Source: Podarcis erhardii
Taxonomy: Eukaryota
Direction: 5' to 3' (one strand)
Length of the DNA stretch: 64,000 nt
NCBI GenBank assembly: GCA_964252035.1
Contig: OZ176200.1
Position numbers and translations under genes: made by a program. The first letter of the stretch is position 1, and each line of letters begins with the position of its first letter. This document shows, one piece after another, positions 13,616 through 60,856 of the stretch. Under the pieces are notes generated by a model. That model was not told the origin of the DNA, ran no database searches, and saw only the letters and a program-made list of their open reading frames with translations.

Positions 13616-13616
<1 letters not shown>

Positions 13617-13658: not shown

Positions 13659-13661
<3 letters not shown>

Positions 13662-18444: not shown

Positions 18445-18450
18445 TTTATT
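18445..18450 (-). terminator. Candidate distal GMPPA poly(A) signal AATAAA
   Basis: tttatt in an AT-rich block about 2.3 kb past the stop; alternative proximal ATTAAA at 20443-20448. Confidence 0.35.
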
Positions 18451-20786: not shown

Positions 20787-20887
20787 TCAGAGAATGATTT
20801 GATTCTTGAAGCTGCGGCTCAGTTCCTTGTGGGGCAGAACGATGGAGTTGAGGATGACAACTTCGGCAGGGATGGTCACGTTGCAGC
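20787..20887 (-). CDS. GMPPA: GMPPA last coding exon ([32 protein letters not shown])
   Basis: Acceptor ctcctcgacag, TGA at 20787-20789; 12 exons total 1269 nt = 422 aa plus stop. Confidence 0.97.
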
Positions 20888-21035
20888 CTGTCGAGGAGGG
20901 AGCAGCAAGAGGCATCAGCAAGTGGGTGGGTGAGAGGGAAAATGCAGCCAACACAAAAGAGAGAAGCGAAGGAGAGTATTCTTCTTTTGCTGGGAGGTAC
21001 AGGGGAAAGAGAGTTTAAAGTGGGCAGACGCTTAC

Positions 21036-21204
21036 CCAGAATGGTGATGGATGGGGTGAGGCGGCCATCCCGAAAGAGAGTCTCGCTGTCAATCTTTGCG
21101 TAGGGATCATTAGGGTTGGGGTCGCTGGGAGTACCCTCTACGCGAGCCCAGCGTCCAATGGTGCTATCCCAGCCCACAATGCTGTTGAGCACACATGTAT
21201 GGTC
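21036..21204 (-). CDS. GMPPA: GMPPA exon ([24 protein letters not shown]...PSITILG), 169 nt
   Basis: Acceptor ccttttcccag, donor TGG|GTAAGC. Confidence 0.97.
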
Positions 21205-22655
21205 CTGGGAAAAGGGGACAGGAAAGAAAAAACAGGCACTAACATTGGGGGGAGGAACCACCAGCCCTTGGGCCAATCCTGGCCTGCCAAGGGTTCCCAT
21301 TTGGCCCACAAGGCCATTGTCCTCCAAACCACACCCACCCGTGATGTCAGATGAAGGAGGGCAGGACCTTCTCCTTTAAGTGAGAGGACAAAGGAGCCTG
21401 TACAATTCTGGCTTTTTCTTCCTCTCCCCCACCATTTCCTACTTAAAGGAGAAGCCAGCTGCTCTAATACAGTTCCTGCATTCCTCGTATACTGCAGGTG
21501 GCATCACCCTGGGATTCAGCAATCTTGCCATGGATGCTACTAAGACTGGTGTTAATCCTTCAGACAGGCCAGGACGTAAATGGTGCTTATAAAAGACTTA
21601 AAATGGAAGTGGAGATCACTGTGGGGAAATCTAAAGTGTAGCTTTTCCCAGACACTCATCAAACTTTCTTTTCCGCTTTTAACAACCCCAACTACTGACT
21701 CAATTGATTTTCTACAGGAACAAACAACTCCTCTATTTATTCAGGAACTTTGTAGAGCTGTTAAACAAGGATTACTAGAGGCATGTGTGGAGGAGCACTT
21801 TCAGCGTTTAAAAGCCGTACCATAAAAATATCAAAACTGCCCTCCGAAACACAAGGCCAAATTAGAAGCGGTGTTAAATGCATCTCTGCATTTAATGTGC
21901 ACTTTTTTAAAACGGAGTTTATTGAGACAGAAGGGAGAGTTTGACCTTCTCCATCCCCTGCTGTGGTCATGATGGAAATGGCACCTCCCAAACTGCCCTG
22001 CTTTCCCTCCCAGTGCAAAGAGCAGCTGTGGAAGAGTGGGTTTTTTCATCATGGCCACAGCAGGGGGGGAAATATCTCCACTTCCCTGCCTGCCACAATG
22101 CCAATAACCATTATTACACCCCCTTCCCATGGATATTTTCATTTCCTTTTTTTTAAGCACATGATAAATGCAAACACACACTTAACTTCTCATCTACTCT
22201 GGCCCTTAACGAAGGAGTAAATCCAATTCAATTCAGCAGGACCTATTTCATGCTTAGGATTGTACTGCACATTTAATGGAAAATGTATGGAAGAAGCTGC
22301 CTTGTACCACATCAGGCCACTGATCCAGCTATTGTCTGACTAGCAACCCCTCTTCAGAATTTCAGTCAGGACTTCTGCAGCCCTCAAGATGCTGGGTGCT
22401 TTTAGAGATGGGACATACCAAGAAAATAAAGGGGGAGGATATAGGGCATCAATAATTCCCCCTCCTAAATTCTTAATAGCCCCGCTAAATTTTTTTATAA
22501 ATGATGCAGAACCACAGATTTTTACAAATCTTTTACATTTCTTGTGAATCCACAGCTTCAGCTGCATTTGTATGTCTTCGTTGATAATACATAAAATAAT
22601 TACCTCCGTAAGTGGGGGCCAGACCGGGCAGGGGAATACCAGACTTTGCAGTGCA

Positions 22656-22674
22656 CTAGTGCCACCTGCAGGGC
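22656..22674 (-). promoter_or_regulatory. CTCF-like motif GCCCTGCAGGTGGCACTAG in a GMPPA intron
   Basis: Strong match to the CTCF core on the minus strand. Confidence 0.5.
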
Positions 22675-23430
22675 ATTAGCAAAACAACGAGAAGCAAAGC
22701 AAGAGCTGTCCTAAGCCAAAAACAGCCTCCTGCCTCTGATCAGAGATGTAACTTCTGAGGCCCTCCAGATGTTCTCTGATGACAACTCCCACCATCCCTG
22801 ACCACTGACCATGATGGCCACAGATTCCACATCCCTGGATTAGAGCTACAAAGTGCCAACCCCAATCCGGCAGCAGTAGTACAATGATCCTACCATTGTG
22901 TAAAACATGGGTGATGGTGGGCTGAGCCTACACGCAGTGCCAAAATAATTAAGTAAAAAGTGCAGTTTGCCGAGGGGTGGGGAGAAAATAATGAAAATGT
23001 TTCTAAAATTGCTAGGCATCGCTGCAGGGACCTTGTTGCTGGCTGTCACTTTTAAGCAAGCATTTTAAATGGTTTCATGCAGACTCCTACATTTAGTGGA
23101 GGGATAGTGGGTCTCTAAAATTGGGGAGGGAGGAATCAAATCAAAATGGCACAACTGGACAATGGGGAGGAAGCCCTATCAAAGTGATGTCACAGACAAC
23201 ATCCAATGGGTTGGCTGCAAAAGTCATACAACTACAGTCATGGGTGCAACAGGCAGTGATGAAACACCACTGTTTGATTTCTGCTTTGTGGAAAAGGTGT
23301 CTCGATCCCAAGCAACAAATGAGCAATAAAAGCACACATTTGTTATACTAAGAACAATAGTCTGTGTAGTCCCCTAAGGTGATGCAAGACATTAGAACTT
23401 GACCCATTGGCTCTTGGGAGCAATACCTAC

Positions 23431-23523
23431 CTGGAGAGAAGCCCCATGCAGAATAATAGACTCACGAACACGCACACCAGCGCCAATCGTCACCCCCTTC
23501 CCGATGGACACATTGGGACCTAG
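23431..23523 (-). CDS. GMPPA: GMPPA exon ([31 protein letters not shown]), 93 nt
   Basis: Acceptor tttccctgtag, donor CAG|GTAGGT; hexapeptide repeats. Confidence 0.96.
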
Positions 23524-23711
23524 CTACAGGGAAAAGGCACAGGGTGGTCAGTGGCCCAACGCATGCCAATAGCCCTCTTCATCTGTATGCTCTCTTATGT
23601 TCAGGGTATGTTCAGGAGCCCAGAGATTAAACCAAAAGTGCACAGCTCTTTAAAATCTATCCCACACATGCTGGAGCCAGGTACAGAGTACACCTTGCCC
23701 ATTACACTTAC

Positions 23712-31888: not shown

Positions 31889-33749
31889 CGCCAGCCTGCC
31901 CCAAGCCTGTTTTTGCAAAGCAGGGCAGGAATTGCTGCTCTGCCTGCCCAGGCTAAAAGGGATGGCGCTTCGAGGGCGGAACCAAGAATCATTTCTCAGA
32001 TTGCAGGCTTGAACCATGCGAAGTGATTCTAGAGAGAATGCAGATTACTGAGCATGTGCAGACGGCTTCCTCTCTCCATTTGAGTAAGTGCAGTCAGCCC
32101 TCACCATTAATGTAGTGCAAGGATTAGCCACCAATCGGCAGAGCCTGCAAAAACCCCTTTTCGGAAGAGAGCGGCTCCACTTGGGAGCTCTAATGGCAGC
32201 CAACCCTATTGGAGCGTGTGTAAATTCCTGCCTTGCTTGCAAAGTACAAGCACATTTTAAGCCAGGTCTGGCATACACTGTGGGTGTGGGGCAGGTGAGT
32301 GTGGCTTCTTACTTGCAGGATGATTTGCACTTCTAATTAAAAGAAGGGCTGCTGATTGAGGATCTTTTCTTAAAGCTTTCTGTGGTTTTACAAGCTGAAC
32401 CTGTGCAGTTACAAGCAAGCACTACTGAATCCAATGACGCTTAGTCCCAGGAAACTGCATCGAATTGCATCCTAATCCTAATAACTTTTTGCATTATGTT
32501 CTATATTGGTGTTTGTTTGTGTTACGATAATCCATCAAGACCAACACATTTGTCTGCCATTTTTTGACTCTTCCTGGGATGTCTTGCTATCGGGGCTGTT
32601 GTGATGAGCTGATGTACTTCAAAATTTACCATACACTTGCTGGACTGTGATCCACTACAAGATGCTCATTTGTAGAAAGCACTCTGCACATACCCAGAAG
32701 CACTCTTCATTACTATTCCCTAGTACATGCTTTAGTGTTGAGTCCTTCCAGGCATGGCATCATTTGTGAGAGACAGACATACAGCGTTGTGTGCTGTTGT
32801 AATGTGAATAAGATGAGCAGCTGTGCAGCCCAAACAATCCCTGATATGGTCAGGAAGGACTATTTATATCTCCAGAACAGCTTGCTTGTGGGGCAGGGGA
32901 AAGGGGTCCTGCAGTGCTGTTTAGTCCCTGCAGGAGGCAGCATTGCCAAGGGAATAAGGGTAAAATCCTGGTTCCAGAACTTACTGAGAAGAACTACATT
33001 TCAGGAAACACAATGTGAGAGGAGAAGAGACCAAACTGTGTTCAGTTCAGCCAGGTACCCAGAATGAAGACGCCTGAGCTAATGTTCTCTGCAGGGAAAG
33101 GTTGAAAAGATTGCTGGATGCCATCCGAGTACCGATACAAATATGGAACAGGAACACAAATAGTCTTTTGTACCTGAAGCTGGGTGATTACATGGTCCTG
33201 GGAGAGAGGAAGGACTTTGTGGGATAAGATTATTATTTCTTTTTTTAGCAGGACCCATTAGGGGACCAGATAGACTCACGGGGCCTTCTAGTCTGCAGCA
33301 ATCCTAGGAATCATCTGCACTTCCATTTGTGCTAAAGCATAGGCCTGTGATTTCTAGGCCTGTGTCGGAGCAGGGGTTTTTTGTCTGGCCCCTCTGTTTA
33401 CCACTGAACTGGAACAAACTGCATGGATTGCTGTTTGTTCGGATTTAGCAGTAAACATGGTTTTCCTGGGGAAAGTGGCGGGACAAACTAAAACCCCTTT
33501 CAGACCCAGACCTAGAAATTACAAACCAGTGCCTAGATAACGTGGGACAGACGAAAGTTTGTATGAGCCCCTATTCTCTGAACCAACAGAACCCTCTTGT
33601 TGACTTTAGGTTTTATCTGAGAAAGAAAAAAAGCTAGAAACTCTTCCCACACTCCACCTTTGCAGCACACAAATGAGATTTCCAGGATTTTAATTTCCTG
33701 CTGATAAATTGCATGTAGCACACACAAGTCCTCTGTACAACCAGCTGGT

Positions 33750-34225: not shown

Positions 34226-34364
34226 TCAGATCACATCAAGGCGTGCAAAAGACTGGTCCATGCCCAGGCTGTTCTCCACAAAGACCTCGTACTTCCCAGC
34301 ATCCGCCGGCGACACCTTTTTGATGGTGAGAGTTGTTGAGTCACTGCCGATGTTATAGTATACG
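34226..34364 (-). CDS. SPEGNB: SPEGNB last coding exon (VYYNIGSD...DAGKYEVFVENSLGMDQSFARLDVI*), 139 nt
   Basis: Acceptor ttcccttccctgcag, TGA at 34226-34228; four exons total 723 nt = 240 aa plus stop. Confidence 0.95.
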
Positions 34365-35298
34365 CTGCAGGGAAGGGAAAGGTGGAAATCTCAAGTCAGG
34401 GCCCTTAGAGACAGCTGGTGTTGGGACACAAAGCAGAAGCTGCTAGACTGACCCATGGAACGCTGGCAGTCCATCAGTTCCATTTGGGTGAGGCTGACTA
34501 ACTGAGCTGCAGAACCAGCAAACATACGGCCTTGCACTTGATTTATTTTATTTTATTTTTGACAATGGAGGTCAAGGCTGTTTTAACTTGGGCTGGAATT
34601 ATCAAAAAGAAGACTCTGGCCCAGGGCCCATGATTTTTATATTATGGCACTGCAACAGTCTACTAATTCCGTCCCCATAACAAAATACTAATTAAAAGCA
34701 CCTTTCTTGATGGCCTGACCTAAAGTCTGTTTTTAAAATGCAGTGCTGGCTTTGAGAATGGTACCAATGCTGCAGGGGGAGGGGGGGGGAGTTGCTGAGG
34801 GGCTGCAAAACTGAAGAATTTCAGAATGACTGCAATTACAGATGCTGATCTTTCTCTCACTTCCTCCCCATTAACTACTAGGCAAGGAAGCCCCTGATCT
34901 TGATGCTTTTAGCTCTGCCAGGTCAGTTCCATCCTGGTCCAATACAAATGAGAACACAGGAATCAACAGGACTTGTGTTAAAAGAAGAAATCACACTTAT
35001 CCTGACTCAACACACGTGTCCTTTGATTCTTACACATTAAGGTCCTCTGTAATAACCAGAAGAACTATGTGCTTCCTTCTTCTTTCTTTCAAAAAGGAAA
35101 GCTTATGTTATCGCGTTCCCCATGCGAGAATTCAAGCTATTGCATCAGCCCTGTTGATTTGAACATGAACTAGTAGTGCTTATGGAATCAGGAAAGAAAG
35201 GGGTGGGGGACCTGGTTCTCGGGCTCCCCTTGCTGCCCACATGCCCAAGCAGTGTTGGTGCTATGAAGCTCATTACACCAGTGGTGAATTTCACTCAC

Positions 35299-35440
35299 CG
35301 ATCGTCCTCTTCAATATCCTCGCCATCCTTGGCCCAGCCAACATCAGGTGCGGGCTCCCCACTGATGTGGGCTGTCAGGTTGACTGTGCTGCCTTTCTTG
35401 GCTTTTGTGCTGTCTGGGCCCTTTTGAATCTTGGCAGGCA
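35299..35440 (-). CDS. SPEGNB: SPEGNB coding exon 3, Ig domain 2 N-half (VPAKIQKGPD...PDVGWAKDGEDIEEDDR), 142 nt
   Basis: Acceptor ccctctgcag, donor TCG|GTGAGT, phase 1/2. Confidence 0.95.
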
Positions 35441-36432
35441 CTGCAGAGGGAGAGAGCAGGTGAGATCAGAACAAGGGCCCTTGCTTAGCCATCTTTTGCC
35501 AAGGGGACGGGCAGCAGAATCCTCTGCTAGGGCATGAGGACCTAATGCTGGGGCTACGAGTTTTGTTATGGTGCTGTGTCCTGTTCCAGGTGTTCTAGAA
35601 TTTCTGTCTGATGACCACGGAATATCTTCCAGTTATTTACTTGGTAAACCCTGTTGCACCATAGGTATACTTTGGCAAACGAGGTAAATAAATAAATTCC
35701 TACAAAGGAGCTCTCCAGGTACCAGGTTCACTGTAGAACAGAATTTGAGAGTCAGAACAATTTCTTGTTATGCAGGTTTTTGTATACTGTGCAGGGATAT
35801 AGACTTTGCAGTTTCCCCAGCTGCTGCGTAGGGGTTTAGGGATTGCGGGGGGGGGGGGGGACAGTACACGTTTGTTTGCAGGGATTAGATTAATTGAATA
35901 ATCACACACAAAAAGCAACCCCTATTTCTGACTAACGCATCTTCTTCCAACCCATGCCTAGAGGCGGTAGGTGTTGTGAAAGGAGACTGCCCTCTTGGGC
36001 CCAAGTCTCAGGGATTAGCCTCCTTTCCTGATGACTGACTAAACTATCCTGAGTTCCCATCAGAGGGTTCCCCCTGCCTTTCTTCTCTTCCTTCAGGTCT
36101 GGCATCATAGCTAGGTAGGGCCACGATGAGATCTAGAAGGGAGGAAGAAGGCTACGTCTTGGCAGAGGCATGGCTAAAGTTAGAAGGGGCTTGGCTTTCT
36201 CTACGCAAGATACAAGGCTATGAATAGAAATGGGCAGGGAATGGGGGGGGGGGCGATGACTTGAAGGAGCAGAGCAGAGAGTGCTATTACCTTCCCCTCC
36301 TGAGATGTGCCAAATTGAGATCTCCCCGTAATGAGGAACTTTGCAAGAATGGCTTGGCTTCCCAGGGGATGTGCGTGGCTAAGTTTAGAAGGGGTGTGTG
36401 GCTATGTAAGGAAGGTAGGCAGGCCATATTAC

Positions 36433-36740
36433 CTTCCACGAGGAGACGTGCCGAGTCAAAGCACTCTCCGAAGGGGTTCTTCACGGAGATGGTGTACTTG
36501 CCCAGGTCAGGAAGGCCAGCATCACGGACCACCAAGGCGACAATGTCTGGGTCCTCAAAGACATAGCGGTACTTGGGCCCGTCCTTGAGTTCCGCACCAT
36601 CTTTGGACCAGCGGATGAAGGGGTCGGGAAAGGCACTGATGCGACACTCCAGCTTGGCTGCGCTCCCCTCGATCAGCATCACGTCGGTGAGGTTCTTCAG
36701 CACCCGTGGGGGCCCCTTCTCCTTCATTTCCTTGCGGGAC
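36433..36740 (-). CDS. SPEGNB: SPEGNB coding exon 2, Ig domain 1 (SRKEMKEKGPPRVL...WSKDG...DLGKYTISVKNPFG), 308 nt
   Basis: Acceptor ctacaag, donor AAG|GTAATA; complete I-set Ig. Confidence 0.95.
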
Positions 36741-38366
36741 CTTGTAGTGGAGAGGAGGGGGTTAAGCAGCAGGCCTTTAAGGCTCCTCTTGGAGCTCCTC
36801 TCCCCCATGAATGAGGGTGGCAAAGTGCTCTGCCTCTAATGGTACCCAGGGCCAAAACAGACAGAGATCAGAAGAACAGCAGGAGATAGCAGCAGCAGCA
36901 GCCAGCTGTGACACAACTGGGCAGCCTGGAAGGAGCAGCCAACCCCCGACCAGCCTGCCAACCACTCAGAACCACGTTATCAAGCTGCAGCTAATTAATC
37001 AACAATATTATGATAGTAAATGCTCTGTGGCTAAATGGGTAGAATCTGATTGACTGGGGAAACGGGACATTCTGCAGAATTCTTCTTACTCAATCCCTCT
37101 TCTCCTCAGCTCCACAGAATTGATAAAAACAAGTAAAATCAGGGATGAAAACATAGTCATTGGCTTATATTTTGATGCTGGAGTTACCTCCTTAAACTGA
37201 ATAGCTGCTGCACCCTTTTTTGTGTGCCAATAGTTCCAAGGCAAATGAGAGTGATGAGCAAGAGTGGTGGGAGTTTTGGGTGCTTCCAAGGCTGTCACTA
37301 TTTTGCATACAAGAGTCAACTGCGTTCCAGAAAATTCAGATTGTGCAATTGATGTGGATTTAGCTCTCTGGTGCAACAAACCCGCTTCCAATAAAATAAA
37401 ACCAGGTTATTATTATTATTGTTAGGGAAGTGACAAGAAAACGTACTAGAAAGCATGGGATAACAATTCCTTGACATGGCATCATGTAACCTCCCTGCAA
37501 ACAACTCAAAATGAATGCTAAATAACCAATGCCATATAAGCTGCTCACAAACTTTGTGCAACCAAATCCGAATGAATCCTCAATGAAGAGGTTGCTAGTA
37601 GTTCAGAAACTGGATTGAATGGAGGAGCTGAGGTGTGAACCTGATTTTCTTGCACAAAGTTCACCTGGTGGTTAGACTATGGCTGTGTACTCATTACCAT
37701 TTACTCTGGCTCCAGTGCGCTCCCACTGCTGGTGTTTGAAGCCCTCAGCACATGATGTTAGCCACAATTCATGTCTATCCTGTAGTTTCTGGAGAAATTC
37801 TGCTGTTGGATGCATTTTCCCTCAAACCATTTTCCATCCGATTTGCAAGCATAAGCCAAGGTTAAGATGAGGTACCAACATGCGAGACACATATTGGCAT
37901 GCACAGACGACTGTTTTGTTGAATTGGAGTTTGGTGGTGAAGGATGGGTGTGTTGCAGATGCAGGAAAACCAAAGAGGTAATGCACATCAGGTGAAGGCA
38001 TCCCTGCACACTCTCTGGTGTGTACAGCAATGTGCCAAAGTGGCTTGAAACGCAGCAAGGGGAAATGACTTCACTGCATTTGAAGGTGCTAATGCTTATG
38101 CCTGATCTTTATTGAGGTGACTTGTTTGTGGCGGTAGCTATATGGCAATGGGCATTCATCCTGATTTACTTTGAAGGGGTGTGTGCATCTTTCTGTTAAC
38201 AATACATTAAGCCCACACTTTACAGTGTACTTCCTAACCAAAAAAGAGTTATTTTAAAAAGTGGATATGTTGTGCTACAGCAACATAGCACTGTCACTGT
38301 ACAAACTTCTGTATGTGCCTCAGTCCTTCCTGCAAGATGCTGACTGTCCTGAGGCCACCTGAGTCA

Positions 38367-38674
38367 GGGCTCATCCAGACTTCCTTTTGTGCTATGTTTC
38401 TAGTCACATGTATGTGCTTTCAACCTCCATATCTGAGCCCCCCCCCCTTTTTTGCTGTGGTTCTTCCCCTGTGAAAACCTGCTCTTTAGCACTAAATTGG
38501 AGCAAACAGCAATCCACAGAAACTCTGAATTGCTGTTTGTTCCGATTCAGCATTAAAGAGTGAAAGCAGGTGAAAGCAGGGGGTGGGACCCCACAACAAC
38601 TCTCGCATGCGGAGTTTTAAAATGTGGACATTTGCCTAGAAAGCCGAGGGCAAAAGATAAGTGTGGATGAGCCT
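38367..38674. mobile_element. MITE in a SPEGNB intron
   Basis: TIRs GGGCTCATCCAGACTT / AAGTGTGGATGAGCCT (14/16); internal hairpin segment shared with about 33400-33460. Confidence 0.55.
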
Positions 38675-40040
38675 TAAGTGTGCTGCCAGGAGTGTTACAT
38701 TTTAAGTATTTTAGTTAAATGGAGCAAAGGAGAAACTATCCCAGTGAAGCAAGGCATCCGTCCACCTTCTTTCCATCTCCAAAGTTCACATTTCCCATGA
38801 AAGTTTTGGAATCTTTATGCAGCCAAACTTCCCAATTCCAGACAACATTTTGGGCTGTAATAAGAATGGCAGAGTCCAAACCTGCAGTTCTCACATGTGC
38901 TGGAGTTTTGTTTCCCCCCTCTTTGCTACATGCCTAAAGCCAGTCCTCTGTTGCCTTGTCTTCCAGATCACCTGCTGCCTCCCCAAAGTCCCTGGCTGCT
39001 TCTCTCACCTCCTCCTTGGTTTTCGCCCTTCTCGCTCATCCATTTCATGACTGCCGTCTCTTGCACCCTCTTCCACTGCACAACTATATTCTGGAACCAC
39101 CACAGCTTCTCAAAATACTGCTCAGGTTGCCCTTTGTCTTCATGAGCACACTCTAACCCTTATTTATTTGCTTTATTACCCAGCGCCCAGGGAGGAGCCA
39201 CAAAAAAATCAATATTGAAAGCAGTTTAAAACAAGTTAGAGTCACAAAAATAGGGTGGGTAGTCAGAAGCACAGAGAGACAGATAAATATTCAAAGGTCA
39301 AGGTAAAGAGGTGTATTTTCAGAATGCGATGGGAAGTATAAAATTATGCGGGGCACACCTCTGCAGAGAGGGAACCCCAAAATTTAAGGATGCCCCACAT
39401 AGAAAGTGTCCTCTTCCAGGCTACCACCCCTTGAACTTCTGAGGACAGTGGAACAACCAAGGGAGCTCCCTCTGATGATTTTACCACCAAACAAGGTCAG
39501 GGCTCTTTTACCCTTCCACTTGTGCTGTGCCAAGTTTTCTGCTTGCCTTGCTCCTTTTTGAGGGAAAAGCTGCTCTTAAGTGATATATTGGGACACATGG
39601 CAATCTGGGGGAAACCCAGCAGCGGGGGGGGGGCGGGGGGCGGGGCGAGCAGCAGAACAGAGGAAGTGTGAATAGTGTATGCAGATGGGGTGGAGATATT
39701 ATGGGTCTGAGCCCCTCTGCACAGCCATACCCCATACTACTGGAGACATAATCAGTCTTGATGTTCAGTTCTACAAGCTCTCCTGCTCTCAACACTACTG
39801 GACACCATCACCACCACTACTACTACAACTACTACTAATAATACTTGGATTTTTACCCATCCTTTACCATAGGGTGGGTTGCAACAATATGAACATGCAA
39901 GATGAAAACCAGTTAAAACGATTTACCACCAGAAGAGCAGGGTGGACCCATTCTTGGGTGTCAAAAGCAGGGACAAAAGAGTTGCATTTTCAGCCCAGCC
40001 CTGATAACAGTCCCATCCTCCCACCTGCCATCCCCCTCAC

Positions 40041-40174
40041 CTGTGCCCACGATAGGAAGCCTGGATGCGGATGGCAGCATTCTGCACCTGAGGGTCATTT
40101 ATGTCCAGGGAAAATCCTGCAGGGGGAGGGGCTGCAGCACCTGCTGCTGGTTTCTTGGGTGCAGCTTTTGACAT
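40041..40174 (-). CDS. SPEGNB: SPEGNB coding exon 1 (MSKAAPKKP...DINDPQVQNAAIRIQASYRGHR), IQ motif, 134 nt
   Basis: Not in the ORF track; read manually. Acceptor ctccccacag sits directly before ATG; donor CAG|GTGAGG, phase 2; IQxxxRG motif. Confidence 0.93.
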
Positions 40175-49060: not shown

Positions 49061-49265
49061 CTAGGGCATGTGGCTGCTGGCGCCATGGTAGGAGCGCAGT
49101 AAGACCTTGTGCTTGGTGGCCACCTCGTTGCGCTGCCGCTGGTGCTCCACCAAGAACTCTTTCAGGCGGCTGGTGGTGAAGGTGAGGGTCTGCCGACGCA
49201 GCTTCATCAGGTAGGCGTCCTGGAGCCAAGGGTTGGCAAAGCAGTCCTTGAGAGCTGGGCGGCTC
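49061..49265 (-). CDS. SPEG: SPEG last coding exon ([37 protein letters not shown]...HMP*)
   Basis: Acceptor ccttgcag; ends in TAG at 49061; near-identical to the recalled SPEG C-terminus. Confidence 0.97.
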
Positions 49266-50842
49266 CTGCAAGGCCAAGGGATATTAGGATGAGGCTGCCT
49301 TTTCCCTCCCCAGCCCTCCCCAGACCCAGAAGAACAAGGAGGAAGTAGGAACATGACTGGAGGAATGAGCTGTGGACAACATATAGGAAGCTGCCTTATC
49401 CTGAGCTGGGCCATTGCTTCATCTAGCTCAGGAGCAGCAGCCCTTCCCAGCCCTACCTGGACACTCAGGTGACTGAACCTGGGAGTTTTTGCGGGCTAAC
49501 CAGCCTCATATAGGCAATGTGCTTAGGTCTAATTAATGCCTTAAGGGGTTAAGATCATAGAGTAAGCTGTTCTGCCAGGTTTAGCTCACCTTGGGAGGAA
49601 CTGGGCATTCAAGCCTTTGTTCTCCTTCAGTCCACCTGAGAAGAGGCTAACCTGGTTGCTCCAGCTTAGCTGAATCGCTCGCACAAGCCACTCTTGACTT
49701 CTACCTATACCAATAATTTAGGAACCATCACCACTATAATGAAGCCAAGTTTTACTGCCTGTGCAGTTTTCTGAAGCACATGAATCTGACCATTGAAGAG
49801 TTTATATGTAAACCATTTTTAACATACCAAATGTGGTCTTTTTCTATGTTAGGGGAAGAGGGAAACTTTGGAACTCTCTTTAAAGGATGCACATTTTAAA
49901 GGTCTAACAGCCTATCTTGGCACGCCTTAATTTGCTGCGTGTTTTGTGAATTTAAATCTCTGCTGGGGTTCTCTTACTTGCCTCAAACCTGGATCTTGAC
50001 AACCAGGAATTCTCCCTTTTGTACCTATATTTCCTTAAGCCAATGGTTTTTGCATGCAGAACATAAGCACGAGCTCCATCACTGGGCAACAGTCCTTCCC
50101 CAAACATGGCCACACCCAGACTTTGTAGCAGAAAAGTTGGGGACTGAGGACATAGCTCAGGACTCTCATCTCCTAGAACAGCCCATTCTCACTCCCCAGG
50201 AGTCCTGCATACTTGGGAGTATGCCATGTTGAGCACAGTGGAATTTACTTCCAGGCACACAAGCCTAGGGTTGCATGGTCAGTTTGCTTTAGAGACTGAG
50301 CACAGTCCTATCTAGCTTCCTCTGGTTTGGAATTACAGGTCCTAGTATTGTTAGTCCAGAGGGACTGCAACTCCCACCATCCCTGACCACTGGCCATTTA
50401 GGCTAGGGCTGATGGGAGTTGAAGTCAAAGGACATTTATAAGGCCAGATGTTCCCCATCCCTGGTACAAACGCTTTAAACATCAAGGGTGATGGTGATCT
50501 CAGGGATGCTGGACTCAGACTGCATTCTGCTACTGCTGAAAAGATCTACTCTGGAATTTCTCAACCTCAGCAGCTCATTGAGCTCTCAGGACTTTATTTC
50601 TGAACTCCAGACTAATCCAAGACTAAGCAGTACCTGCTTTTTTGACACAGGGGCTATGGCCATAGCACCATTCCCATGGCTCAAATGCCACCAGAGAGAG
50701 AAACCTCCGTAATCTGAGTCTTGCCTTGACGCTCCCCCAGATTCTAGGTCTGTCTGTTCCACTGCTCTTTACGAAGGCAACTTTTCCTCGCCACCCACCC
50801 CATGGCGTTGCCTCCAAGGCCTTTCACCCTTCTTTCACTCAC

Positions 50843-52255: not shown

Positions 52256-52565
52256 TAAAGTTCTGTCCTCATCTCCTAGTGTGAGTCCTGCAAAAGAGTA
52301 GCCTACGAAACCAAGAACTTAACATTCTGGGAAGGGAGGAATTCCCCCATTTCTGCCATCTCCACTCTTTGGTGCTAGTCCCTTTGTCAATTAAATAGTA
52401 TGCAACTCCAACCCATTAGCCACATGCGTAGCTCAGCCTATAGGTACCATGTATATTCATTCCATGGCATACTTACTCCACAAGCAGTTTGCCTTGCCCA
52501 CAAAATCTCACGCACATCCTCCCCTACCCAATCTTCTGGTATGCCAATTCCATAAAGATACTCAC

Positions 52566-52789
52566 CCATGTACTCCAGTGTGCCAACACGACGCCCCAGC
52601 TGGCGCAACACCAGTGGGTTGTAGGTCTGGGCACTGCCGAAGTCAATAATTTTTAATGTGTTTGTGGGGCTGACAATGATGTTATCAGGCTTCAGGTCGA
52701 GATGAATGATGCGCCGTCCATGCAGATATTCTAGTCCTTGGAGGATTTGTGTTACATACCCCACCACATCATCCTCTGAGTAACGGAAC
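52566..52789 (-). CDS. SPEG: SPEG kinase 2 catalytic exon ([17 protein letters not shown]), 224 nt
   Basis: Acceptor ttactctacag, donor TGG|GTGAGT; intact HLD-K-N and DFG motifs. Confidence 0.97.
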
Positions 52790-53569
52790 CTGTAGAGTAA
52801 AGCATGTCACCGAGAGGATAGAGCGAAGGACACAAGAACCCTTCCCTTGCACTTGTACTGGTACTGGTGCAATTAAACAACAATATGGTACCATTACTCC
52901 TAAATAAGCACACTGGTGACTTTAAGTTATACACAATGAAGACCCATGATTATATTTTCTATTTTTTTAAACAAGTTATACATCTATTTTTGTTTTGGTT
53001 TCATGCATTTGTTGAACTGATCTTTTCTTTTAAAACTTTCCCCTGTCTGTACAACCCCATTCAAGGCCCACCTATGATGTTTTTTGCTGACAGTGGTCAG
53101 AAGTTAAAATTTTAACCCCACCCCAACCTCATCCTTGTGTGTTGCTGTGTGACAACGGGGGACATTAAATGATCAAGGGCTGATCAATATGTTATTTTCT
53201 TACTTTCATTTTTACTTTCAGTCACTTCACCACCACCCTGTTTCTGTTCTACATTACTTTGCAATTTCCTTTGTTCCTGCTGCTTAAGCTTTGCACGTGC
53301 AATCAAAATAGCACTGCTCCACACAGGAAGGAGGACAGGGACAGGACAGGGTGCCCCAAAGGACATCCCAATGAGGATTAAGCAGACTTAGCAGCCATGG
53401 AATTTTGACGGCTGGAGGAACATCAGAGAAATGGGTGGAATGGAAAATGGAACAAAGGCACGAGGGGCTGACTGAACAGAAGCACTCCACACTGCAACAT
53501 GTTGCTGTAGATTCCACTTTTCGTAACTAAATACCACCACCATATTCCTTTTCTTATAATGCTAGAGAC

Positions 53570-53760
53570 CGTCAACATCTGCTGAAGCTGAATGTTGGAA
53601 CATTCAGGACAGACAAAACCAAGTACTTCTTCACGCAGCACCAGCCAAGCTATGGTGCTTGCTCTCACAGGAGGCAGTGAAGGCCACCAAGTTGGATGGC
53701 TTGAAAAGAGGATGAGACAAATTCATGGGGAAGGAGAGGGCTATCAGGTTGCTGGAACCA
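53570..53760 (+). mobile_element. CR1 LINE 3' fragment
   Basis: ttcaggacagacaaaaccaagtacttcttcacgcagc...ggcttgaaaagagg...aaattcatgg. Confidence 0.65.
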
Positions 53761-53999
53761 CAGGAGGGTTTGAAGAATCACATGGAGTCTGAAACATAGG
53801 GGCAAGGCAGCCCCTCAACCCTTTAGGGAAGTAGGCAGCAGTTACCTCTAGTTGTCTTGTGTCCACTTGGGGTTTTCTGTCCTGTCTTTTATCCATTTGT
53901 TGGGTTTGGTTGTTTTACCCCCAGCCCACCCAGTGCTCCAACTGATTGTGATCTTTCTGATTTGAATCATAGCCTAAACATTTTGCAGTTCCTTCCCCC

Positions 54000-54240
54000 A
54001 CCTACTCTGGTTCTGTATCATCAGCAAAATCTAATGTTTTACTGAAGTCATTAATCATAATATTGAACAGTGCTAGATCCAGGACAGAGACATAGACATT
54101 TTGGCTGCCAAATGCATTAAAATTAAAATAAGAGGCTCTGGAAACCTGTGCTCTATACAGACTCATCTGAAAAAAGAAATTCCACTTAAAAGTGTTGCAA
54201 GGAGTATCAGTTGCACAACAGAAAGCCATTTATGATCCAA
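54000..54240 (-). mobile_element. Degenerate CR1 RT fragment
   Basis: Reverse strand reads FNIMINDF...DFADDT. Confidence 0.55.
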
Positions 54241-54244
54241 TGAC

Positions 54245-54245
<1 letters not shown>

Positions 54246-54288
<43 letters not shown>
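54246..54288. repeat. (AAT)n microsatellite
   Basis: Direct read. Confidence 0.95.
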
Positions 54289-54998
54289 TTGTTATTATCA
54301 TTATTATCATGATATACTACTAATTAGTATACTATTATTTATACATGTGGGACGTGACAAAATACAGTATCTCCTGTCAGGATACTACATTCCATTTCTA
54401 CCCATCGGTCTGCATTCTATGCCCACTGAGCACGTTCAGTTCTTATTGGGCTGTTAGGTCTCCCCACCCCCACAAATGTTTTGTACTTTTGCAAACCTTG
54501 GGGCTTCCCTGAGCCTTTTGTTCATGAGTGGCACTGTTTTGGCTACATGAGGACTGGCACTCAGAGATCTGAAGTTGCTGCCAGTATATGATCGTGTTGG
54601 CAGTGCCATCAATTGACATGGTGCTTTGTAGCAGGGGTGGGGAATCAGTGGCCCTCTAGATGTTTTTGGGACTCCCAACTCTCACCAACTCAGCCATTGG
54701 CTGTGCTGATGAGAGGCAGAATTCAACAGCATCTGGAGGACCATGAATCCCTCACCCCTTTTCTTATGCAAAGCAACAACAAAAAAGGTCTTTGCCTCAA
54801 GGAACATATACTATGCATTTCAGCCACAAGAGGAATAGGAGAGGCAAGGGTTAACAACTAATGACTGTAAGCCCATCAAGTTGCACATTCACAGGAATCC
54901 GCTCATGTCAATCTCATGAACATCAAAGCGCAGGAAAGGTTTATATCCATTTATCTTTAACATATTCACAGAAGTAAGATTGCAGAAAAAAATTCCTC

Positions 54999-55058
54999 TG
55001 TATAATGTGGTCCTCAGTCACTAACTATAATGTGTATAATATGGTCCTCAGTCACTAA
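54999..55058. repeat. Near-perfect tandem duplication (period 34)
   Basis: tgtataatrtggtcctcagtcactaa twice. Confidence 0.85.
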
Positions 55059-55585
55059 GTACTCTTCATTCAAGCCAGGCCCTTCCTTGAACCATCTAGA
55101 TGAATTTTACTAAAGGTGTCCTGCAGTGTCTTAAAGCATAGCATAATTTACTTGCCTCTTGCTGTTCCAGATTATAAAGCAGAAGATGACAAGGAATAGG
55201 TTCAAATGTTTGGGTCGAGTGGAGGTATCTGCACTGTGTTACTTTTATTTCCCTTCAGCTCTACTATTCTGACTCAGTGGCACAGTTTGCCCTCTTCAAT
55301 TGCCCTGTTGTGAATAGGTCCAGTTATCACCTCTGCCATGGATTTTCTGGTCAACTAAAACTGATTCAGGCCCACAAACTGATTCATGCCCCCATTGCAT
55401 GTGACTAGACCAACACTACTGTCTCATCCTGGTTTTTATGTTTGCAACTCTCTGTTACCTTGCTAGTTAGCCAAACCCCTCTGTGGCCCAATGCTTGGCC
55501 CTCTCAGACACAGAGCTTCTCCTCTTAACATCCTGGAGTCCCACCCCTAACCCCCTCCTGCCTCCCAACCTACCCCACAACAAAC

Positions 55586-55825
55586 CTGTCAACAAAGTGG
55601 TAGAGGATCTCCTTCCCAGGGCAGTGTTCAGCTATCAGCACCAGATAGCGGGGGGTGATGTAGGCCTCGTGCAGAGTCATGATGCGATCGTGGTGTAGGC
55701 CCTTTAGGATCTCATATTCCTGCAGGACGCTCTGCTTGCCTTCCGTTTCATAGGGCACAATCTTAGCCATGAATCGCTTGCCCGTGGCATTCTCCTTACA
55801 TTCCCGAATCACTCCAAACCGGCCC
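55586..55825 (-). CDS. SPEG: SPEG kinase 2 N-lobe exon ([12 protein letters not shown]...FMAKIV...[13 protein letters not shown]), 240 nt
   Basis: Acceptor atgcgcag, donor CAG|GTTTGT, phase 2/2; Gly-loop, AK lysine, helix C. Confidence 0.96.
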
Positions 55826-56949
55826 CTGCGCATATATACATGGAGCATGCTAAGTGCATGTCTGGACGCTTGCTAGGCCTGCCTAACAAAAGCTAAGGCA
55901 CAGTGTACATAGCTTCTGTTACACAGCACTGCACATGCAACCACAGAGTTCAATGGATATGACAACAGTTTTCATATAGTTAAATCACCCAGGATTGGCT
56001 GAGACAGAGTGGGCCAAGATGCACTTGTGGGCTGGAGGTTCCCCATCTGCTTTACAGAGTGAGACTATAAGACTGTGATAGTACAGTTTTGGACAGTACC
56101 ACTCCAGATCACAGCTGCGAAGGGGTCACATTTTTGAATGCTCCATCTTGTAACAAGTTCATTGCATGTAGTAAGCAAGCACATTAAGAAGAGGGTTTAT
56201 AACTAAATGTTTCTGACAAGCTAGTTTAGTACATATAAGGTTTTTTAAAAGCACTGGAGGGAACATTCAAAGGTATGTGTTTCCCAGGCACAGCAGTACG
56301 AAGTAGCGCAATCCAGAATTCTACCACTTTGGTTTACTACTTTAAACTGCATAATGCATAGAAAGAGCTCTTGAATTTGTGTGACAAGTTTAATCTCCGT
56401 CGGCTTAGCTGAAATGAAACACCTGCCATATGATTCCTGCCATTTTCATGCAATAAACATGGTTGTGTGATTGGGCCTGTGGAGATGAGAGTCAGAGAGT
56501 CAAGTACATGACTGAAATGTACCATAATGGAATGGAAGGGGGTTTAGCATTGCTTGGGCACAGAGGAGAAGGAGGGCTTCTGGCGTGGGGTCTAAATCTC
56601 TGAAGATACATAGGAGGCAGTGGACGGGGGCAAGGGAGGCTGCTAATGCTATGGTCACAACATGAGAGGCCTTGGTTACATCCAGGATGAGAGAAGGTTG
56701 GTTGCTGCACCCAATGCTGAGAAATTCCTGGTCCAGAAATAGACTAGAGGGAGGCATCATTCTGTGCTGCTTTGCATGCTATCTAGGAGAAGGTCTCAGG
56801 TTCAGACCCTGACATATCCAGGTGCAGGGCAGGGAACAAGGTTTTCTCCTTTGAACCTGGAGCACCAACAGCCAGATAATAGTGGACCAGAATGACCACT
56901 TCCTGCACCGGGCTTTCAGCTTCCTATGTCCCTATGAAAGATCTCTTAC

Positions 56950-60018: not shown

Positions 60019-60186
60019 TTGCTACAGCCAGGGTGCAGGAACTGGTGGCAGTGCCCAGCGCATTGGTAGCGTTGCATTCATACAAGCCTGCATCCTTCTT
60101 GGAGACTTTGGAGATGGTGAGCAGCTGGCGGCCATCTTTACATGCCACAATGTTGAGAACACCCTCTGATACCAGGGTGTTCTTAT
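60019..60186 (-). CDS. SPEG: SPEG Ig domain exon 2 (DKNTLVSE...[14 protein letters not shown]...TLAVA), 168 nt
   Basis: Acceptor cctctgcag, donor CAA|GTAAGG; DxGxYxC Ig motif. Confidence 0.96.
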
Positions 60187-60739
60187 CTGCAGAGGACAAG
60201 AAAACCGATCCGTACAACCACTCTTAGGTATATCAATATTGCACACTGCCTTACATCCTCCTCCTGTAGCTTGTGCTCTAATGCATCTTTGCCACAGAGT
60301 TCATACTCAGTTACTCAAACATGTGAGCTCCATCAGAAGTCGGAGCACCTCTTTGCCTGGCTGAACCCAAGGGGTCCCTATCCCAACAGAGTTCGGCACT
60401 TCTGAGTTCCAAGAGAATGTAACCATTTGGATGGCAACCAGTGCAAGGATACGCAATTTGCATCATGTTGATGCAGGGGTATACAGCTAGGTCTGTCTGC
60501 ATGGATGCCCAAATGGCAGCTCAGTTCTGGGTTTGACCTCTCCTGGCTCTGTGGCTGGACCTGCCTTGGGTGGCATTGCATCATGGCTGTCTGGTAAGAT
60601 AACTGTTAGGAATCACACACTGGGAAACAACTCGGCAGGTATCAGGCTCCACCTTTCTGATCTTGAGAGTCAAGAAGCTATATTGCTTCTTCCAGCCCCA
60701 ACATGCAGACACACACGCTCCTTGTGACACAATGCTTAC

Positions 60740-60856
60740 CTTTCATCCAAAGTATGCGAGGGGCAGGGCTGGCTGCAGGAAGGCAGCAGAGCTGCACTGC
60801 CTCTCCCTCCAGCAGTACCTGGTCCTTCAATTTTATGTGGAAAACTGGAGGGAAGT
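60740..60856 (-). CDS. SPEG: SPEG Ig domain exon 1 ([19 protein letters not shown]...ILWMK), 117 nt
   Basis: Acceptor aatgcag, donor AAG|GTAAGC, phase 1/1; I-set Ig N-terminal half. Confidence 0.96.

What the first reader, a model, noticed from the sequence alone, without database searches (positions are those of the whole stretch)
34226..40174. SPEGNB looks like a free-standing copy of the obscurin IQ-Ig module
Seen: the assembled 240-aa protein is IQ + Ig + Ig, and its IQ/Ig junction reads LDINDPQVQNAAIRIQASYRGHRSRKEMKEKGPP...LECRIS...RWSKDGAELKDG...DLGKYTISVKNPFG. Recalled, not searched: human obscurin has DLGDPSMDKAAVKIQAAFKGYKVRKEMKQQEGP...LECVV...RWLKDGVELTDG...DAGCYTCQVSNKFG. The match spans the pre-IQ D-x-x-D-P, the IQ, the RKEMK linker and the Ig. 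Established: SPEG resembles the obscurin kinase C-terminus, and OBSL1, in the same human neighbourhood, resembles its N-terminal Ig array. Inference: this poorly characterised gene may be a third piece of a split obscurin paralogue, acting as a small calmodulin-binding sarcomeric adaptor. It lies 3' of the SPEG kinases, whereas the obscurin IQ lies N-terminal to them, which implies a rearrangement or duplication.
Basis: partly seen in the sequence, partly recalled or inferred. Interest (0 to 1): 0.7.

Follow-up and report, generated by a model that had tools for sequence, protein, structure and literature searches.

The report
Lizard SPEGNB, the vertebrate CAVP-target protein
This is the already annotated lizard gene SPEGNB, a small muscle protein with a calmodulin-type IQ motif and two Ig domains; it is the vertebrate counterpart of the amphioxus CAVP-target protein, and its Ig pair is closer to myosin light-chain kinase than to obscurin.

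Summary
Four minus-strand exons with canonical AG/GT sites (40174-34226) splice into a 240-aa protein of IQ + I-set Ig + I-set Ig. It is 100% identical over exon 2 to 'SPEG neighbor protein [Podarcis raffonei]'. The recalled obscurin string is real: I verified it in fox obscurin.

The evolutionary reading is mostly not supported.
- The best IQ-Ig1 matches are echinoderm MLCK-like proteins (93-106 bits), not obscurin (53-78 bits).
- Both Igs align without gaps, linker included, to the Ig pair before Fn3-kinase in echinoderm MLCK (139-155 bits). ML trees place the pair with the MYLK pair (96/87, 92/92).
- The IQ similarity is generic. Unrelated IQ proteins score 18-20 bits, against 14-22 bits for obscurin.
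- The IQ intron is absent from a fish obscurin gene, from amphioxus and from tunicates.

The protein is a gapless full-length homologue (43% identity, E 5e-65) of amphioxus CAVPT (Swiss-Prot P05548). Free-standing orthologues also exist in tunicates. The gene therefore predates the 1R duplication that produced OBSCN versus OBSL1+SPEG, so it is not a fragment of a split obscurin paralogue. For Ig1 alone, kinship with the obscurin post-IQ Ig cannot be rejected (AU p = 0.52).

The idea of a small adaptor that binds a calmodulin-type protein fits CAVPT. Known gene; modest interest.

The parts
40041..40174 (-). SPEGNB coding exon 1: ATG at 40174, disordered Ala/Pro-rich N-terminus, first half of the IQ motif. 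It ends in phase 2 (GH-R). An AG acceptor sits directly before the ATG, so an upstream 5'UTR exon is likely.
36433..36740 (-). SPEGNB coding exon 2: second half of the IQ motif, the RKEMKEKGPP linker and the whole of Ig1. It ends in phase 1.
   Evidence: (I-set 65.5 bits)
35299..35440 (-). SPEGNB coding exon 3: the VPAKIQKGP inter-domain linker and the first half of Ig2. It ends in phase 2.
34226..34364 (-). SPEGNB coding exon 4: second half of Ig2 and the TGA stop (34228-34226).
40041..40081 (-). IQ motif, 5' part (aa 32-45). The complete consensus IQxxxRGxxxR is invariant in 12 gnathostome orthologues.
36722..36740 (-). IQ motif, 3' part (aa 45-51).
36434..36712 (-). Ig1 (aa 55-147), I-set.
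34229..35438 (-). Ig2 (aa 149-240), I-set, split by a phase-2 intron (35298-34365).
49061..49414 (-). Context: ORF holding the last coding exon of SPEG (regulatory tail after kinase 2; stop at 49061-49063), 8.9 kb upstream of the SPEGNB ATG.
   Evidence: the SPEG name rests on the neighbour's name and on the Ig8 placement
52438..55848 (-). Context: SPEG kinase-2 exons (ORFs 52438-52767, with HLDLKPDN and DFG, and 55570-55848).
60023..60848 (-). Context: the SPEG Ig before Fn3-kinase 2, in two exons (about 60848-60716 and 60187-60023; phase-1 intron after WMK). It groups with the obscurin Ig that occupies the same position (98/85).

Best explanation
The locus is the lizard (Podarcis) orthologue of SPEGNB, which is the vertebrate member of the chordate CAVP-target protein (CAVPT) family. 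It encodes a free-standing protein of about 240 aa: a disordered N-terminus, one complete IQ motif on a helix, and two tightly linked I-set Ig domains. The gene is old. It exists as a separate small gene in amphioxus, tunicates and all jawed vertebrates sampled, and it is under strong constraint. Its Ig1-Ig2 pair is the closest known relative of the Ig pair that precedes Fn3-kinase in MYLK-type kinases, best preserved in echinoderm MLCK-like proteins. The IQ-Ig junction recurs in a sea-star MLCK-like protein, in a hemichordate obscurin-like protein and in vertebrate obscurin. So it belongs to the MLCK/obscurin/titin group of muscle Ig proteins, but it is not a fragment of the OBSL1+SPEG obscurin ohnologue. 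Its position next to SPEG is a vertebrate arrangement. Likely mechanism (inferred, not shown here): the IQ helix holds calmodulin or a calmodulin-like EF-hand protein, as the CAVPT IQ holds CaVP, while the rigid Ig tandem docks on a myofilament or cytoskeletal partner. This would place a Ca2+ sensor at a fixed site in striated muscle. The nearly invariant Ser46 inside the IQ (RGHRSRK) is a candidate regulatory phosphosite.
For: Gene model and domains. Identity: 100% over exon 2 to the Podarcis raffonei SPEG neighbor protein, and many orthologues are named 'CAVP-target protein' by NCBI. BLASTP against Swiss-Prot CAVPT P05548 gives 43% identity over 217 aa with no gaps, E 5e-65; against the amphioxus tandem paralogue, 41% over 234 aa. 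Free-standing orthologues in Ciona (229 aa) and Styela (230 aa). cDNA contigs of a teleost and of amphioxus carry the whole ORF with in-frame stops upstream of the ATG. Constraint: 75% mean column identity across gnathostomes, with the IQ consensus invariant. MYLK link: full-length SPEGNB aligns collinearly with Antedon MLCK 1133-1322 (139 bits) and Patiria 2355-2579 (123 bits), sharing the VPAKI.KGP-type linker. In reverse, the Antedon pair scores 151-155 bits on SPEGNBs, as much as on its sea-star orthologue (157). Trees: Ig2 with the MYLK pre-Fn3 Ig 98/93, the pair 96/87, and 92/92 once CAVPT is added; the chordate free-standing clade has 99/97. Telokin is the best single-domain PDB hit (51.9 bits). 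Model: helix 28-53 plus two Ig domains, pLDDT 81.7; best fold match is the titin A168-A169 tandem, TM 0.71/0.87. Dating: OBSCN versus OBSL1+SPEG are 1R ohnologues (PMC12198301). That CAVPT binds CaVP through its IQ, and that phosphorylation regulates this, is my recollection of Takagi & Cox 1990 and Petrova et al. 1996; I could not read those papers here.
Against: No binding data exist for any vertebrate SPEGNB. Human expression is very low, limited to tongue and skeletal muscle (PMC9846087), and a loss-of-function allele segregates in humans (PMC11576641), so the function may be dispensable in some lineages. The placement of Ig1 is only moderately supported (95/75), and a clade with the obscurin post-IQ Ig is not rejected. 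The SPEG N-terminal Igs, OBSL1 and titin were not in the trees. The representative search returned only giant proteins, so closer mid-sized relatives may have been missed.
Confidence: 0.8

Rival explanations
1. One reading: SPEGNB is the IQ-Ig piece of the obscurin ohnologue that broke into OBSL1, SPEGNB and SPEG in early vertebrates, later rearranged to lie 3' of SPEG.
For: The IQ-Ig1 region aligns end to end with the obscurin IQ-Ig (70 bits), and the reverse search puts SPEGNBs first after obscurins (74-78 bits). The gene sits next to SPEG. A clade of Ig1 with the obscurin post-IQ Ig is not rejected (p-AU 0.52).
Against: Free-standing full-length orthologues in amphioxus (CAVPT, sequenced as a protein) and in tunicates predate the 1R duplication (PMC12198301). 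No kinase or obscurin-like gene lies within 10 kb in Ciona, Styela or amphioxus. Echinoderm MLCK-like proteins give better matches. Ig2 has no collinear partner in obscurin. Holding the pair together with the obscurin pair costs 24.5 lnL units (p-AU 0.04 and 0.025). The IQ intron is absent from the tarpon obscurin gene.
Confidence: 0.05
2. Mosaic origin: IQ plus Ig1 share a specific pre-chordate ancestor with the obscurin IQ-Ig module (also seen in the hemichordate obscurin-like protein), while Ig2 came from a MYLK-type gene, the two being joined by exon shuffling across the phase-1 intron.
For: The IQ-then-Ig arrangement with similar spacing occurs in vertebrate obscurin, Saccoglossus P0128 and Patiria P0042. 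The phase-1 intron between Ig1 and Ig2 is the only intron shared by lizard, tunicates, amphioxus and Antedon MLCK. The Ig1 + obscurin post-IQ Ig clade is not rejected and even has a slightly higher likelihood (+0.8 lnL).
Against: Ig1 alone scores 83 bits on Antedon IgX, against about 40 or less on the obscurin post-IQ Ig. In echinoderm MLCK the two Igs are already adjacent with the same linker. The IQ similarity to obscurin is at the level of unrelated IQ proteins. Phase-1 introns between Ig domains are commonplace.
Confidence: 0.12
3. Telokin-like unit: SPEGNB is the detached C-terminal 'CaM-binding segment + Ig' tail of SPEG kinase 2 (as telokin is of MYLK), expressed from an internal or downstream promoter or by read-through.
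For: It lies 3' of SPEG kinase 2 on the same strand. The ATG directly follows a splice acceptor. Telokin is the best single-domain PDB hit. Telokin-type Igs fall near Ig1 in the FastTree tree.
Against: The SPEG stop codon is 8.9 kb upstream. Longer predicted isoforms in other species carry unrelated N-terminal extensions, never SPEG sequence. cDNA contigs show in-frame stops before the ATG. The gene is unlinked to any kinase within 10 kb in amphioxus and tunicates. Obscurin kinase 2 has no such tail.
Confidence: 0.03

Closest known systems
CAVP-target protein (CAVPT, Swiss-Prot P05548) of amphioxus Branchiostoma lanceolatum
   Same: Same architecture and length (243 vs 240 aa): N-terminal Ala/Pro-rich tail, IQ motif, two I-set Igs with a VPAK linker. 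43% identity over 217 aa without a single gap. Both are free-standing small genes. NCBI already names many vertebrate orthologues 'CAVP-target protein'.
   Different: The amphioxus IQ is incomplete (IQASFRMHKNR, lacking the Gly), whereas vertebrates keep the full IQxxxRGxxxR. Its partner CaVP has, to my knowledge, no described vertebrate orthologue, so the vertebrate partner is unknown. The intron positions differ except for the phase-1 intron between the Igs. Amphioxus has a tandem duplicate and no SPEG neighbour within 10 kb.
Ig pair preceding Fn3-kinase in MYLK-type kinases (echinoderm 'myosin light chain kinase, smooth muscle-like': Antedon XP_071942496, Patiria XP_038047057)
   Same: Collinear gapless alignment of both Igs and the linker, at 123-155 bits. 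Sister groups in ML trees. Shared phase-1 intron between the two Igs.
   Different: SPEGNB has no Fn3, kinase or telokin Ig. The echinoderm pair has no IQ directly in front of it; Patiria carries a separate IQ-Ig near its N-terminus. Lizard MYLK (Varanus) keeps only the Ig2-like domain (its Ig8). It lacks the Ig1-like 'IgX', and its positional pair scores only 22 + 23 bits.
Obscurin IQ motif plus the following Ig (fox XP_072620065 aa 5505-5632; also opossum, coelacanth, frog and tarpon obscurins)
   Same: An IQ motif directly followed by an I-set Ig with similar spacing, and a pre-IQ acidic D-P. The end-to-end alignment gives 53-78 bits.
   Different: In obscurin the post-IQ Ig is followed by about 140 non-Ig residues, not by a second Ig. 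The Ig alone scores only about 40 bits or less, an ordinary I-set level. The RKEMK linker is not conserved in fish obscurin. In tarpon the region lies on one uninterrupted exon with no IQ intron. It is embedded in a giant protein with RhoGEF and kinase domains.
Telokin / kinase-related protein (the C-terminal Ig of MYLK, expressed on its own)
   Same: A small independent muscle Ig protein related to MLCK. It is the best single-domain PDB match to Ig1 (51.9 bits).
   Different: Telokin is transcribed from inside MYLK and has one Ig and no IQ. SPEGNB is a separate gene with two Igs and an IQ.

Membership tests
CAVPT / SPEGNB family | N-terminal IQ motif | tested here: met
   Pfam IQ 23.3 bits (cut-off 20.3) at aa 32-51 of P0160. 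IQxxxRGxxxR is invariant in 12 gnathostomes.
CAVPT / SPEGNB family | Two tandem I-set Ig domains joined by a short VPAK-type linker, total length about 225-245 aa | tested here: met
   Two I-set domains, 139 bits. Alignment with tunicate and amphioxus members. AF2 model with two Igs, pLDDT 81.7.
CAVPT / SPEGNB family | Full-length collinear similarity to the protein-sequenced amphioxus CAVPT (P05548) | tested here: met
   43% identity over 217 aa, 0 gaps, E 5e-65. P05548 lies in the same 90% cluster as P0330. The chordate free-standing clade has 99/97 support.
CAVPT / SPEGNB family | Free-standing transcript and protein | tested here: inconclusive
   The lizard gene model has its own ATG and stop. 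Teleost and amphioxus cDNA contigs have in-frame stops upstream of the ATG. Lizard RNA could not be examined.
CAVPT / SPEGNB family | The IQ binds an EF-hand protein (CaVP or calmodulin) | not testable with these tools
   Needs a binding assay. Only the motif's conservation is shown.
Fragment of the obscurin ohnologue (OBSL1 + SPEG) | The best hits of IQ-Ig1 are obscurin | tested here: not met
   Patiria and Antedon MLCK-like 92.8 and 88.1 bits, against obscurins 53-64.5. In reverse, the Patiria IQ-Ig scores 106 bits on SPEGNBs, against 74-78 for the fox obscurin IQ-Ig.
Fragment of the obscurin ohnologue (OBSL1 + SPEG) | Ig1 groups with the obscurin post-IQ Ig | tested here: inconclusive
   The free ML tree places Ig1 with echinoderm IgX and a tick Unc-89 Ig (95/75), and the obscurin post-IQ Igs apart (100/99). 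The constrained clade is not rejected (p-AU 0.52).
Fragment of the obscurin ohnologue (OBSL1 + SPEG) | Collinearity beyond Ig1 (Ig2 matches the next obscurin domain) | tested here: not met
   Non-Ig sequence follows the obscurin post-IQ Ig. The pair constraint costs 24.5 lnL units, p-AU 0.04 and 0.025.
Fragment of the obscurin ohnologue (OBSL1 + SPEG) | Shared phase-2 intron inside the IQ | tested here: not met
   The tarpon obscurin IQ-Ig (aa 1280-1520) is one uninterrupted exon, L004:34832-35554. The intron is also absent from amphioxus and tunicate orthologues. Only one obscurin gene was examined.
Fragment of the obscurin ohnologue (OBSL1 + SPEG) | Origin at or after the vertebrate duplication that produced OBSL1+SPEG | tested here: not met
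   Orthologues in Ciona, Styela and Branchiostoma. The duplication is dated to 1R-WGD in PMC12198301.
MYLK (smooth-muscle MLCK) family | Ig pair homologous to the pair before Fn3-kinase | tested here: met
   139 and 123 bits, collinear; 151-155 bits in reverse; trees 98/93 (Ig2), 96/87 and 92/92 (pair).
MYLK (smooth-muscle MLCK) family | Fn3, kinase domain, RRKWQK-type CaM-binding segment and telokin Ig | tested here: not met
   None of these is present in the 240-aa protein. So it is a relative of one MYLK segment, not an MLCK.

The most novel reading that the evidence does not exclude
SPEGNB/CAVPT arose before the chordate radiation by partial duplication of an ancestral MYLK-type gene. That ancestor carried both an IQ-Ig module and an 'IgX-Ig8' pair in front of Fn3-kinase, as echinoderm MLCK-like genes still do. 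Vertebrate MYLK later lost IgX. The free-standing gene is therefore the only vertebrate carrier of that domain, and an overlooked member of the titin/obscurin/MYLK 'connectin-family' group of linked genes. The obscurin IQ-Ig would be a more distant cousin of the same module.
Probability: 0.4. Interest if true: 0.45.

Novelty: already known. Interest (0 to 1): 0.3.

Why it matters
SPEGNB is an annotated but essentially unstudied vertebrate gene: only five papers in the library mention it, and none addresses its function. Linking it explicitly to amphioxus CAVPT, whose IQ-mediated binding to an EF-hand Ca2+ sensor was worked out biochemically, gives a concrete and testable function for a protein that is 70-80% conserved from sharks to mammals. 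It sits beside SPEG, a gene mutated in myopathy and cardiomyopathy. The analysis also corrects a tempting story. The gene is not debris from the break-up of an obscurin duplicate. It is an older, independent gene whose Ig pair is MYLK-like. That matters for anyone reconstructing the evolution of the titin/obscurin/MLCK family, or interpreting variants that hit both the SPEG 3' region and SPEGNB.

Tried and rejected
SPEGNB orthologues, SPEG and OBSL1 could not appear. I re-ranked by single-domain score locally.
2. The word search cannot see 240-aa proteins from a 102-aa exon query. I used the stop-free 178-aa ORF around exon 2, with the region restricted to the exon.
3. RNA evidence failed. 
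4. Look-ups failed for Patiria P0042 (not on record) and fox obscurin (too long). Exact spliced mapping of tarpon P0109 failed, so I used tblastn.
5. The ESM Atlas search gave only generic Ig clusters. A PDB search with a SPEG kinase exon gave only generic kinases. Paper searches for the CAVPT peptide and accession found nothing relevant, and the original CAVPT papers are not in the library.
6. Single-domain AU tests lack power, so I do not claim that Ig1 is excluded from kinship with the obscurin post-IQ Ig.
7. I considered conserved adjacency to a kinase gene in tunicates and amphioxus and rejected it: there is none within 10 kb.
8. No contig that I took for human was fetched, saved or compared.

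Full report
1. WHAT IS THERE

On the minus strand, four ORF pieces with canonical AG/GT borders join into one frame.
- Exon 1: 40174-40041.
- Exon 2: 36740-36433.
- Exon 3: 35440-35299.
- Exon 4: 34364-34226.

Together they give 723 nt = 240 codons plus TGA, with intron phases 2, 1 and 2. All quoted strings are present.

Pfam finds an IQ motif (23.3 bits, cut-off 20.3, aa 32-51) and two I-set domains in the orthologue P0160 (exon pieces). An AlphaFold2 model built on 12 orthologues (mean pLDDT 81.7) shows a disordered N-terminus, a helix over aa 28-53 and two Ig sandwiches joined by about 3 residues. The best fold matches are rigid titin tandems such as A168-A169 (TM 0.71/0.87).

Upstream on the same strand lie SPEG exons: kinase ORFs at 52438-52767 and 55570-55848, an Ig at about 60.0-60.8 kb, and the last coding exon with its stop at 49061. 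A GMPPA-like exon lies downstream.

2. IDENTITY

The word search used the stop-free ORF around exon 2. It returns 'SPEG neighbor protein [Podarcis raffonei]' at 100% identity over the exon (E 1.4e-70), so the window comes from a Podarcis lizard or a very close relative. More than 100 orthologue clusters follow, from sharks to mammals. Many of them are named 'CAVP-target protein' by NCBI.

Twelve gnathostome orthologues share 75% mean column identity. I37, Q38, R42, G43, H44 and R47 of the IQ are invariant, and S46 nearly so. The gene is therefore already annotated and strongly constrained. The library holds only five papers that mention SPEGNB. They report very low human expression limited to tongue and skeletal muscle (PMC9846087) and a segregating human frameshift allele (PMC11576641).

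3. THE OBSCURIN CLAIM, TESTED

The recalled obscurin string is genuine. Fox obscurin P0005 carries it at aa 5505-5632. Full-length SPEGNB aligns to P0005 5494-5632 over query aa 7-146 at 70 bits. In the reverse direction, the best non-obscurin hits of the fox IQ-Ig among the 373 proteins I held are SPEGNBs (74-78 bits). So the resemblance is real.

It is not the closest resemblance, and its parts are not specific.
- Ranked by single-domain score, IQ-Ig1 hits a sea-star 'MLCK, smooth muscle-like' protein (P0042: IQ at 219-237, then an Ig) at 92.8 bits and a crinoid MLCK-like protein (P0082) at 88.1 bits. Obscurins score 53-64.5 bits. In reverse, the Patiria IQ-Ig scores 106 bits on SPEGNBs.
- Ig1 alone scores 83.3 bits on P0082 and 67.8 on P0042. 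The obscurin post-IQ Ig is not among the 25 best domains (all of those at 40.5 bits or more), and the best score on any Ig of fox obscurin is 38.8. That is the ordinary level for any pair of I-set domains.
- The N-terminal IQ region alone (aa 12-60) scores 18.8, 19.6 and 18.1 bits on radial-spoke protein RSP23, Sp17 and CFAP91. The pre-IQ 'DDP' and the trailing 'RKEV' align in RSP23, and CFAP91 also ends in 'RKEV'. Obscurin IQs score 21.6, 18.8, 15.9 and 13.9 bits. The pre-IQ D-P, the IQ and the RKEMK-type tail are thus features of a common IQ subtype.
- The RKEMK linker is not conserved in tarpon obscurin (RKDLRPVF).
- In tarpon obscurin the whole IQ-Ig region (aa 1280-1520) lies on one uninterrupted exon. 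The IQ intron is also absent from amphioxus and tunicate orthologues.

4. THE MYLK LINK

Full-length SPEGNB aligns collinearly and without gaps across both Igs and the linker to the Ig pair that directly precedes Fn3-kinase in the echinoderm proteins. The scores are 139.1 bits for P0082 1133-1322 and 123.2 bits for P0042 2355-2579. The linkers are APPKIEKYP and VPAKIESGP, against VPAKIQKGP in SPEGNB.

P0082 is a true MLCK. It has Fn3, a kinase, an RRRWQKTANAVRA calmodulin-binding segment and a terminal Ig.

The relation holds in reverse. The Antedon pair scores 151-155 bits on shark and teleost SPEGNBs and 150 bits on amphioxus CAVPT. That is as much as on its sea-star orthologue (157 bits).

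Lizard MYLK (Varanus) scores only 22 + 23 bits at the equivalent position. Its best domain is the telokin Ig at 45.5 bits, in line with telokin being the best single-domain PDB hit (51.9 bits).

5. TREES

A careful ML tree of 78 Ig domains gave these placements.
- Ig2 (99/98) is sister to the pre-Fn3 Ig of Antedon, Patiria and Varanus MYLK (98/93).
- Ig1 (98/98) is sister to the echinoderm 'IgX' plus one tick Unc-89 Ig (95/75).
- The obscurin post-IQ Igs form a separate clade (100/99).
- Varanus MYLK Ig7 groups with a different echinoderm Ig (97/87). Vertebrate MYLK therefore lacks IgX.
- The tree recovers the expected SPEG Ig8 + obscurin pre-Fn3 Ig pairing (98/85), which validates the method.

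Single domains are short, and the AU tests reflect that. Holding Ig1 together with the obscurin post-IQ Igs is not rejected and even gives a slightly higher likelihood (+0.8 lnL, p 0.52). Holding Ig2 with the next obscurin Ig costs 17 lnL units (p 0.16).

Concatenated pairs (182 columns) carry more signal. SPEGNB joins the MYLK pre-Fn3 pair at 96/87. With CAVPT added, the support is 92/92, and the chordate free-standing clade has 99/97. Forcing SPEGNB together with the obscurin pair costs 24.5 lnL units (p-AU 0.04; 0.025 with the hemichordate protein added). That rejection is borderline and is driven largely by Ig2.

6. AGE AND INDEPENDENCE OF THE GENE

Profile searches found free-standing orthologues in Ciona (229 aa) and Styela (230 aa), several marine metatranscriptome sequences, and P0330. 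The 90% cluster of P0330 contains Swiss-Prot P05548, the amphioxus CAVP-target protein.

Lizard SPEGNB and P05548 are 43% identical over 217 residues with no gap (E 5e-65).

Neighbouring genes differ between lineages.
- Amphioxus has CAVPT and a CAVPT-like paralogue in tandem, followed by an arylesterase gene.
- Ciona has ABHD18 and wnt neighbours.
- Styela has a GPCR neighbour.
- None of them has a kinase or giant Ig gene within 10 kb.

Teleost and amphioxus cDNA contigs of about 1 kb carry the whole ORF with in-frame stops before the ATG. Longer predicted isoforms in other vertebrates carry unrelated N-terminal extensions, not SPEG sequence.

The only intron shared by lizard, tunicates, amphioxus and Antedon MLCK is the phase-1 intron between the two Igs, which is commonplace between Ig domains.

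PMC12198301 treats OBSCN and OBSL1+SPEG as ohnologues from the 1R whole-genome duplication, with OBSL1 and SPEG splitting before the gnathostomes. A recent obscurin review likewise places the three-gene expansion in vertebrates (PMC12812942). A gene already free-standing in amphioxus and tunicates cannot be a product of that split.

7. HOW IT PROBABLY WORKS (INFERRED)

The complete and invariant IQxxxRGxxxR motif on an exposed helix should hold apo-calmodulin or a CaM-like EF-hand protein. The short-linked Ig tandem should bind a filament or cytoskeletal partner. This is the CAVPT-CaVP arrangement. My knowledge of that biochemistry is from memory of Takagi & Cox 1990 and Petrova et al. 1996, which are not in the library. 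Nothing here shows binding, localisation or even transcription in the lizard.

8. LIMITS

- The SPEG N-terminal Igs, OBSL1 and titin Igs were not in the trees.
- The representative search was truncated to giant proteins.
- Only one obscurin gene structure was read.
- No human contig was fetched or compared.

VERDICT

The functional guess is reasonable. The evolutionary interpretation as a split-obscurin fragment is not supported. This is a known, annotated gene of the CAVPT family, and its Ig pair is MYLK-like.

Noticed in passing
L007:14595-17618, L008:14428-17750, L011:14326-17894: Amphioxus carries a tandem paralogue ('CAVP-target protein-like', 236-237 aa) 3-5 kb downstream of CAVPT. Its IQ (IQAAFRSHKSRKELMEK) is closer to the vertebrate motif than that of CAVPT itself. 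One hybrid-genome model fuses the two genes into a 571-aa 'Obscurin-like' protein, and the B. lanceolatum annotation labels CAVPT 'MYLK'.
   Followed up: partly
L008 (GCA_000003815.2 CM022903.1, 16.56 Mb of 18.55 Mb): [quoted passage not shown] If so, CAVPT belongs to the same linked gene family cluster. I could not verify the chromosome number with the tools.
   Followed up: no
L001:12678-17836: In Ciona the SPEGNB-like gene lies next to a wnt gene. From my memory only, vertebrate SPEG/SPEGNB lies near the WNT6-WNT10A cluster, which would suggest conserved macro-synteny. The Wnt subfamily was not determined.
   Followed up: no
L003:1-3339, 10001-23652, 32479-33652: In the crinoid Antedon, three muscle-type genes lie head to tail: a kinase + Ig gene (520 aa, cut at the locus end), the 2000-aa MLCK-like gene, and a 3684-aa multi-Ig gene.
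   Followed up: no
P0042 aa 205-333 (Patiria miniata MLCK-like): The sea-star MLCK-like protein carries an N-terminal IQ-Ig module that is the best IQ-Ig match to SPEGNB (93-106 bits). About 800 non-Ig residues follow it. Whether this is a true part of the MLCK transcript or a merged gene model could not be checked, because the look-up failed.
   Followed up: partly
window 40175: The SPEGNB ATG is immediately preceded by a strong polypyrimidine tract and AG acceptor (ccccacag|ATG). The 5'UTR must therefore come from at least one unidentified upstream exon, somewhere between the SPEG stop (49061) and 40175.
   Followed up: no
window 60716-60187: The SPEG Ig before Fn3-kinase 2 is split by a phase-1 intron right after the conserved Trp (ILWMK|D). 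This differs from the phase-2 intron that splits SPEGNB Ig2 (EEDDR|V).
   Followed up: yes
window 20281-21327 (-): A long ORF contains a GMPPA-like exon (a GDP-mannose pyrophosphorylase A C-terminal motif, recognised from memory). This matches the mammalian order SPEG - SPEGNB - GMPPA.
   Followed up: no
window about 44.8-45.6 kb and about 52.0 kb: Dinucleotide microsatellites, seen as (RE)n / (CV)n ORF translations, lie in the SPEG-SPEGNB intergenic region and in a SPEG intron.
   Followed up: no
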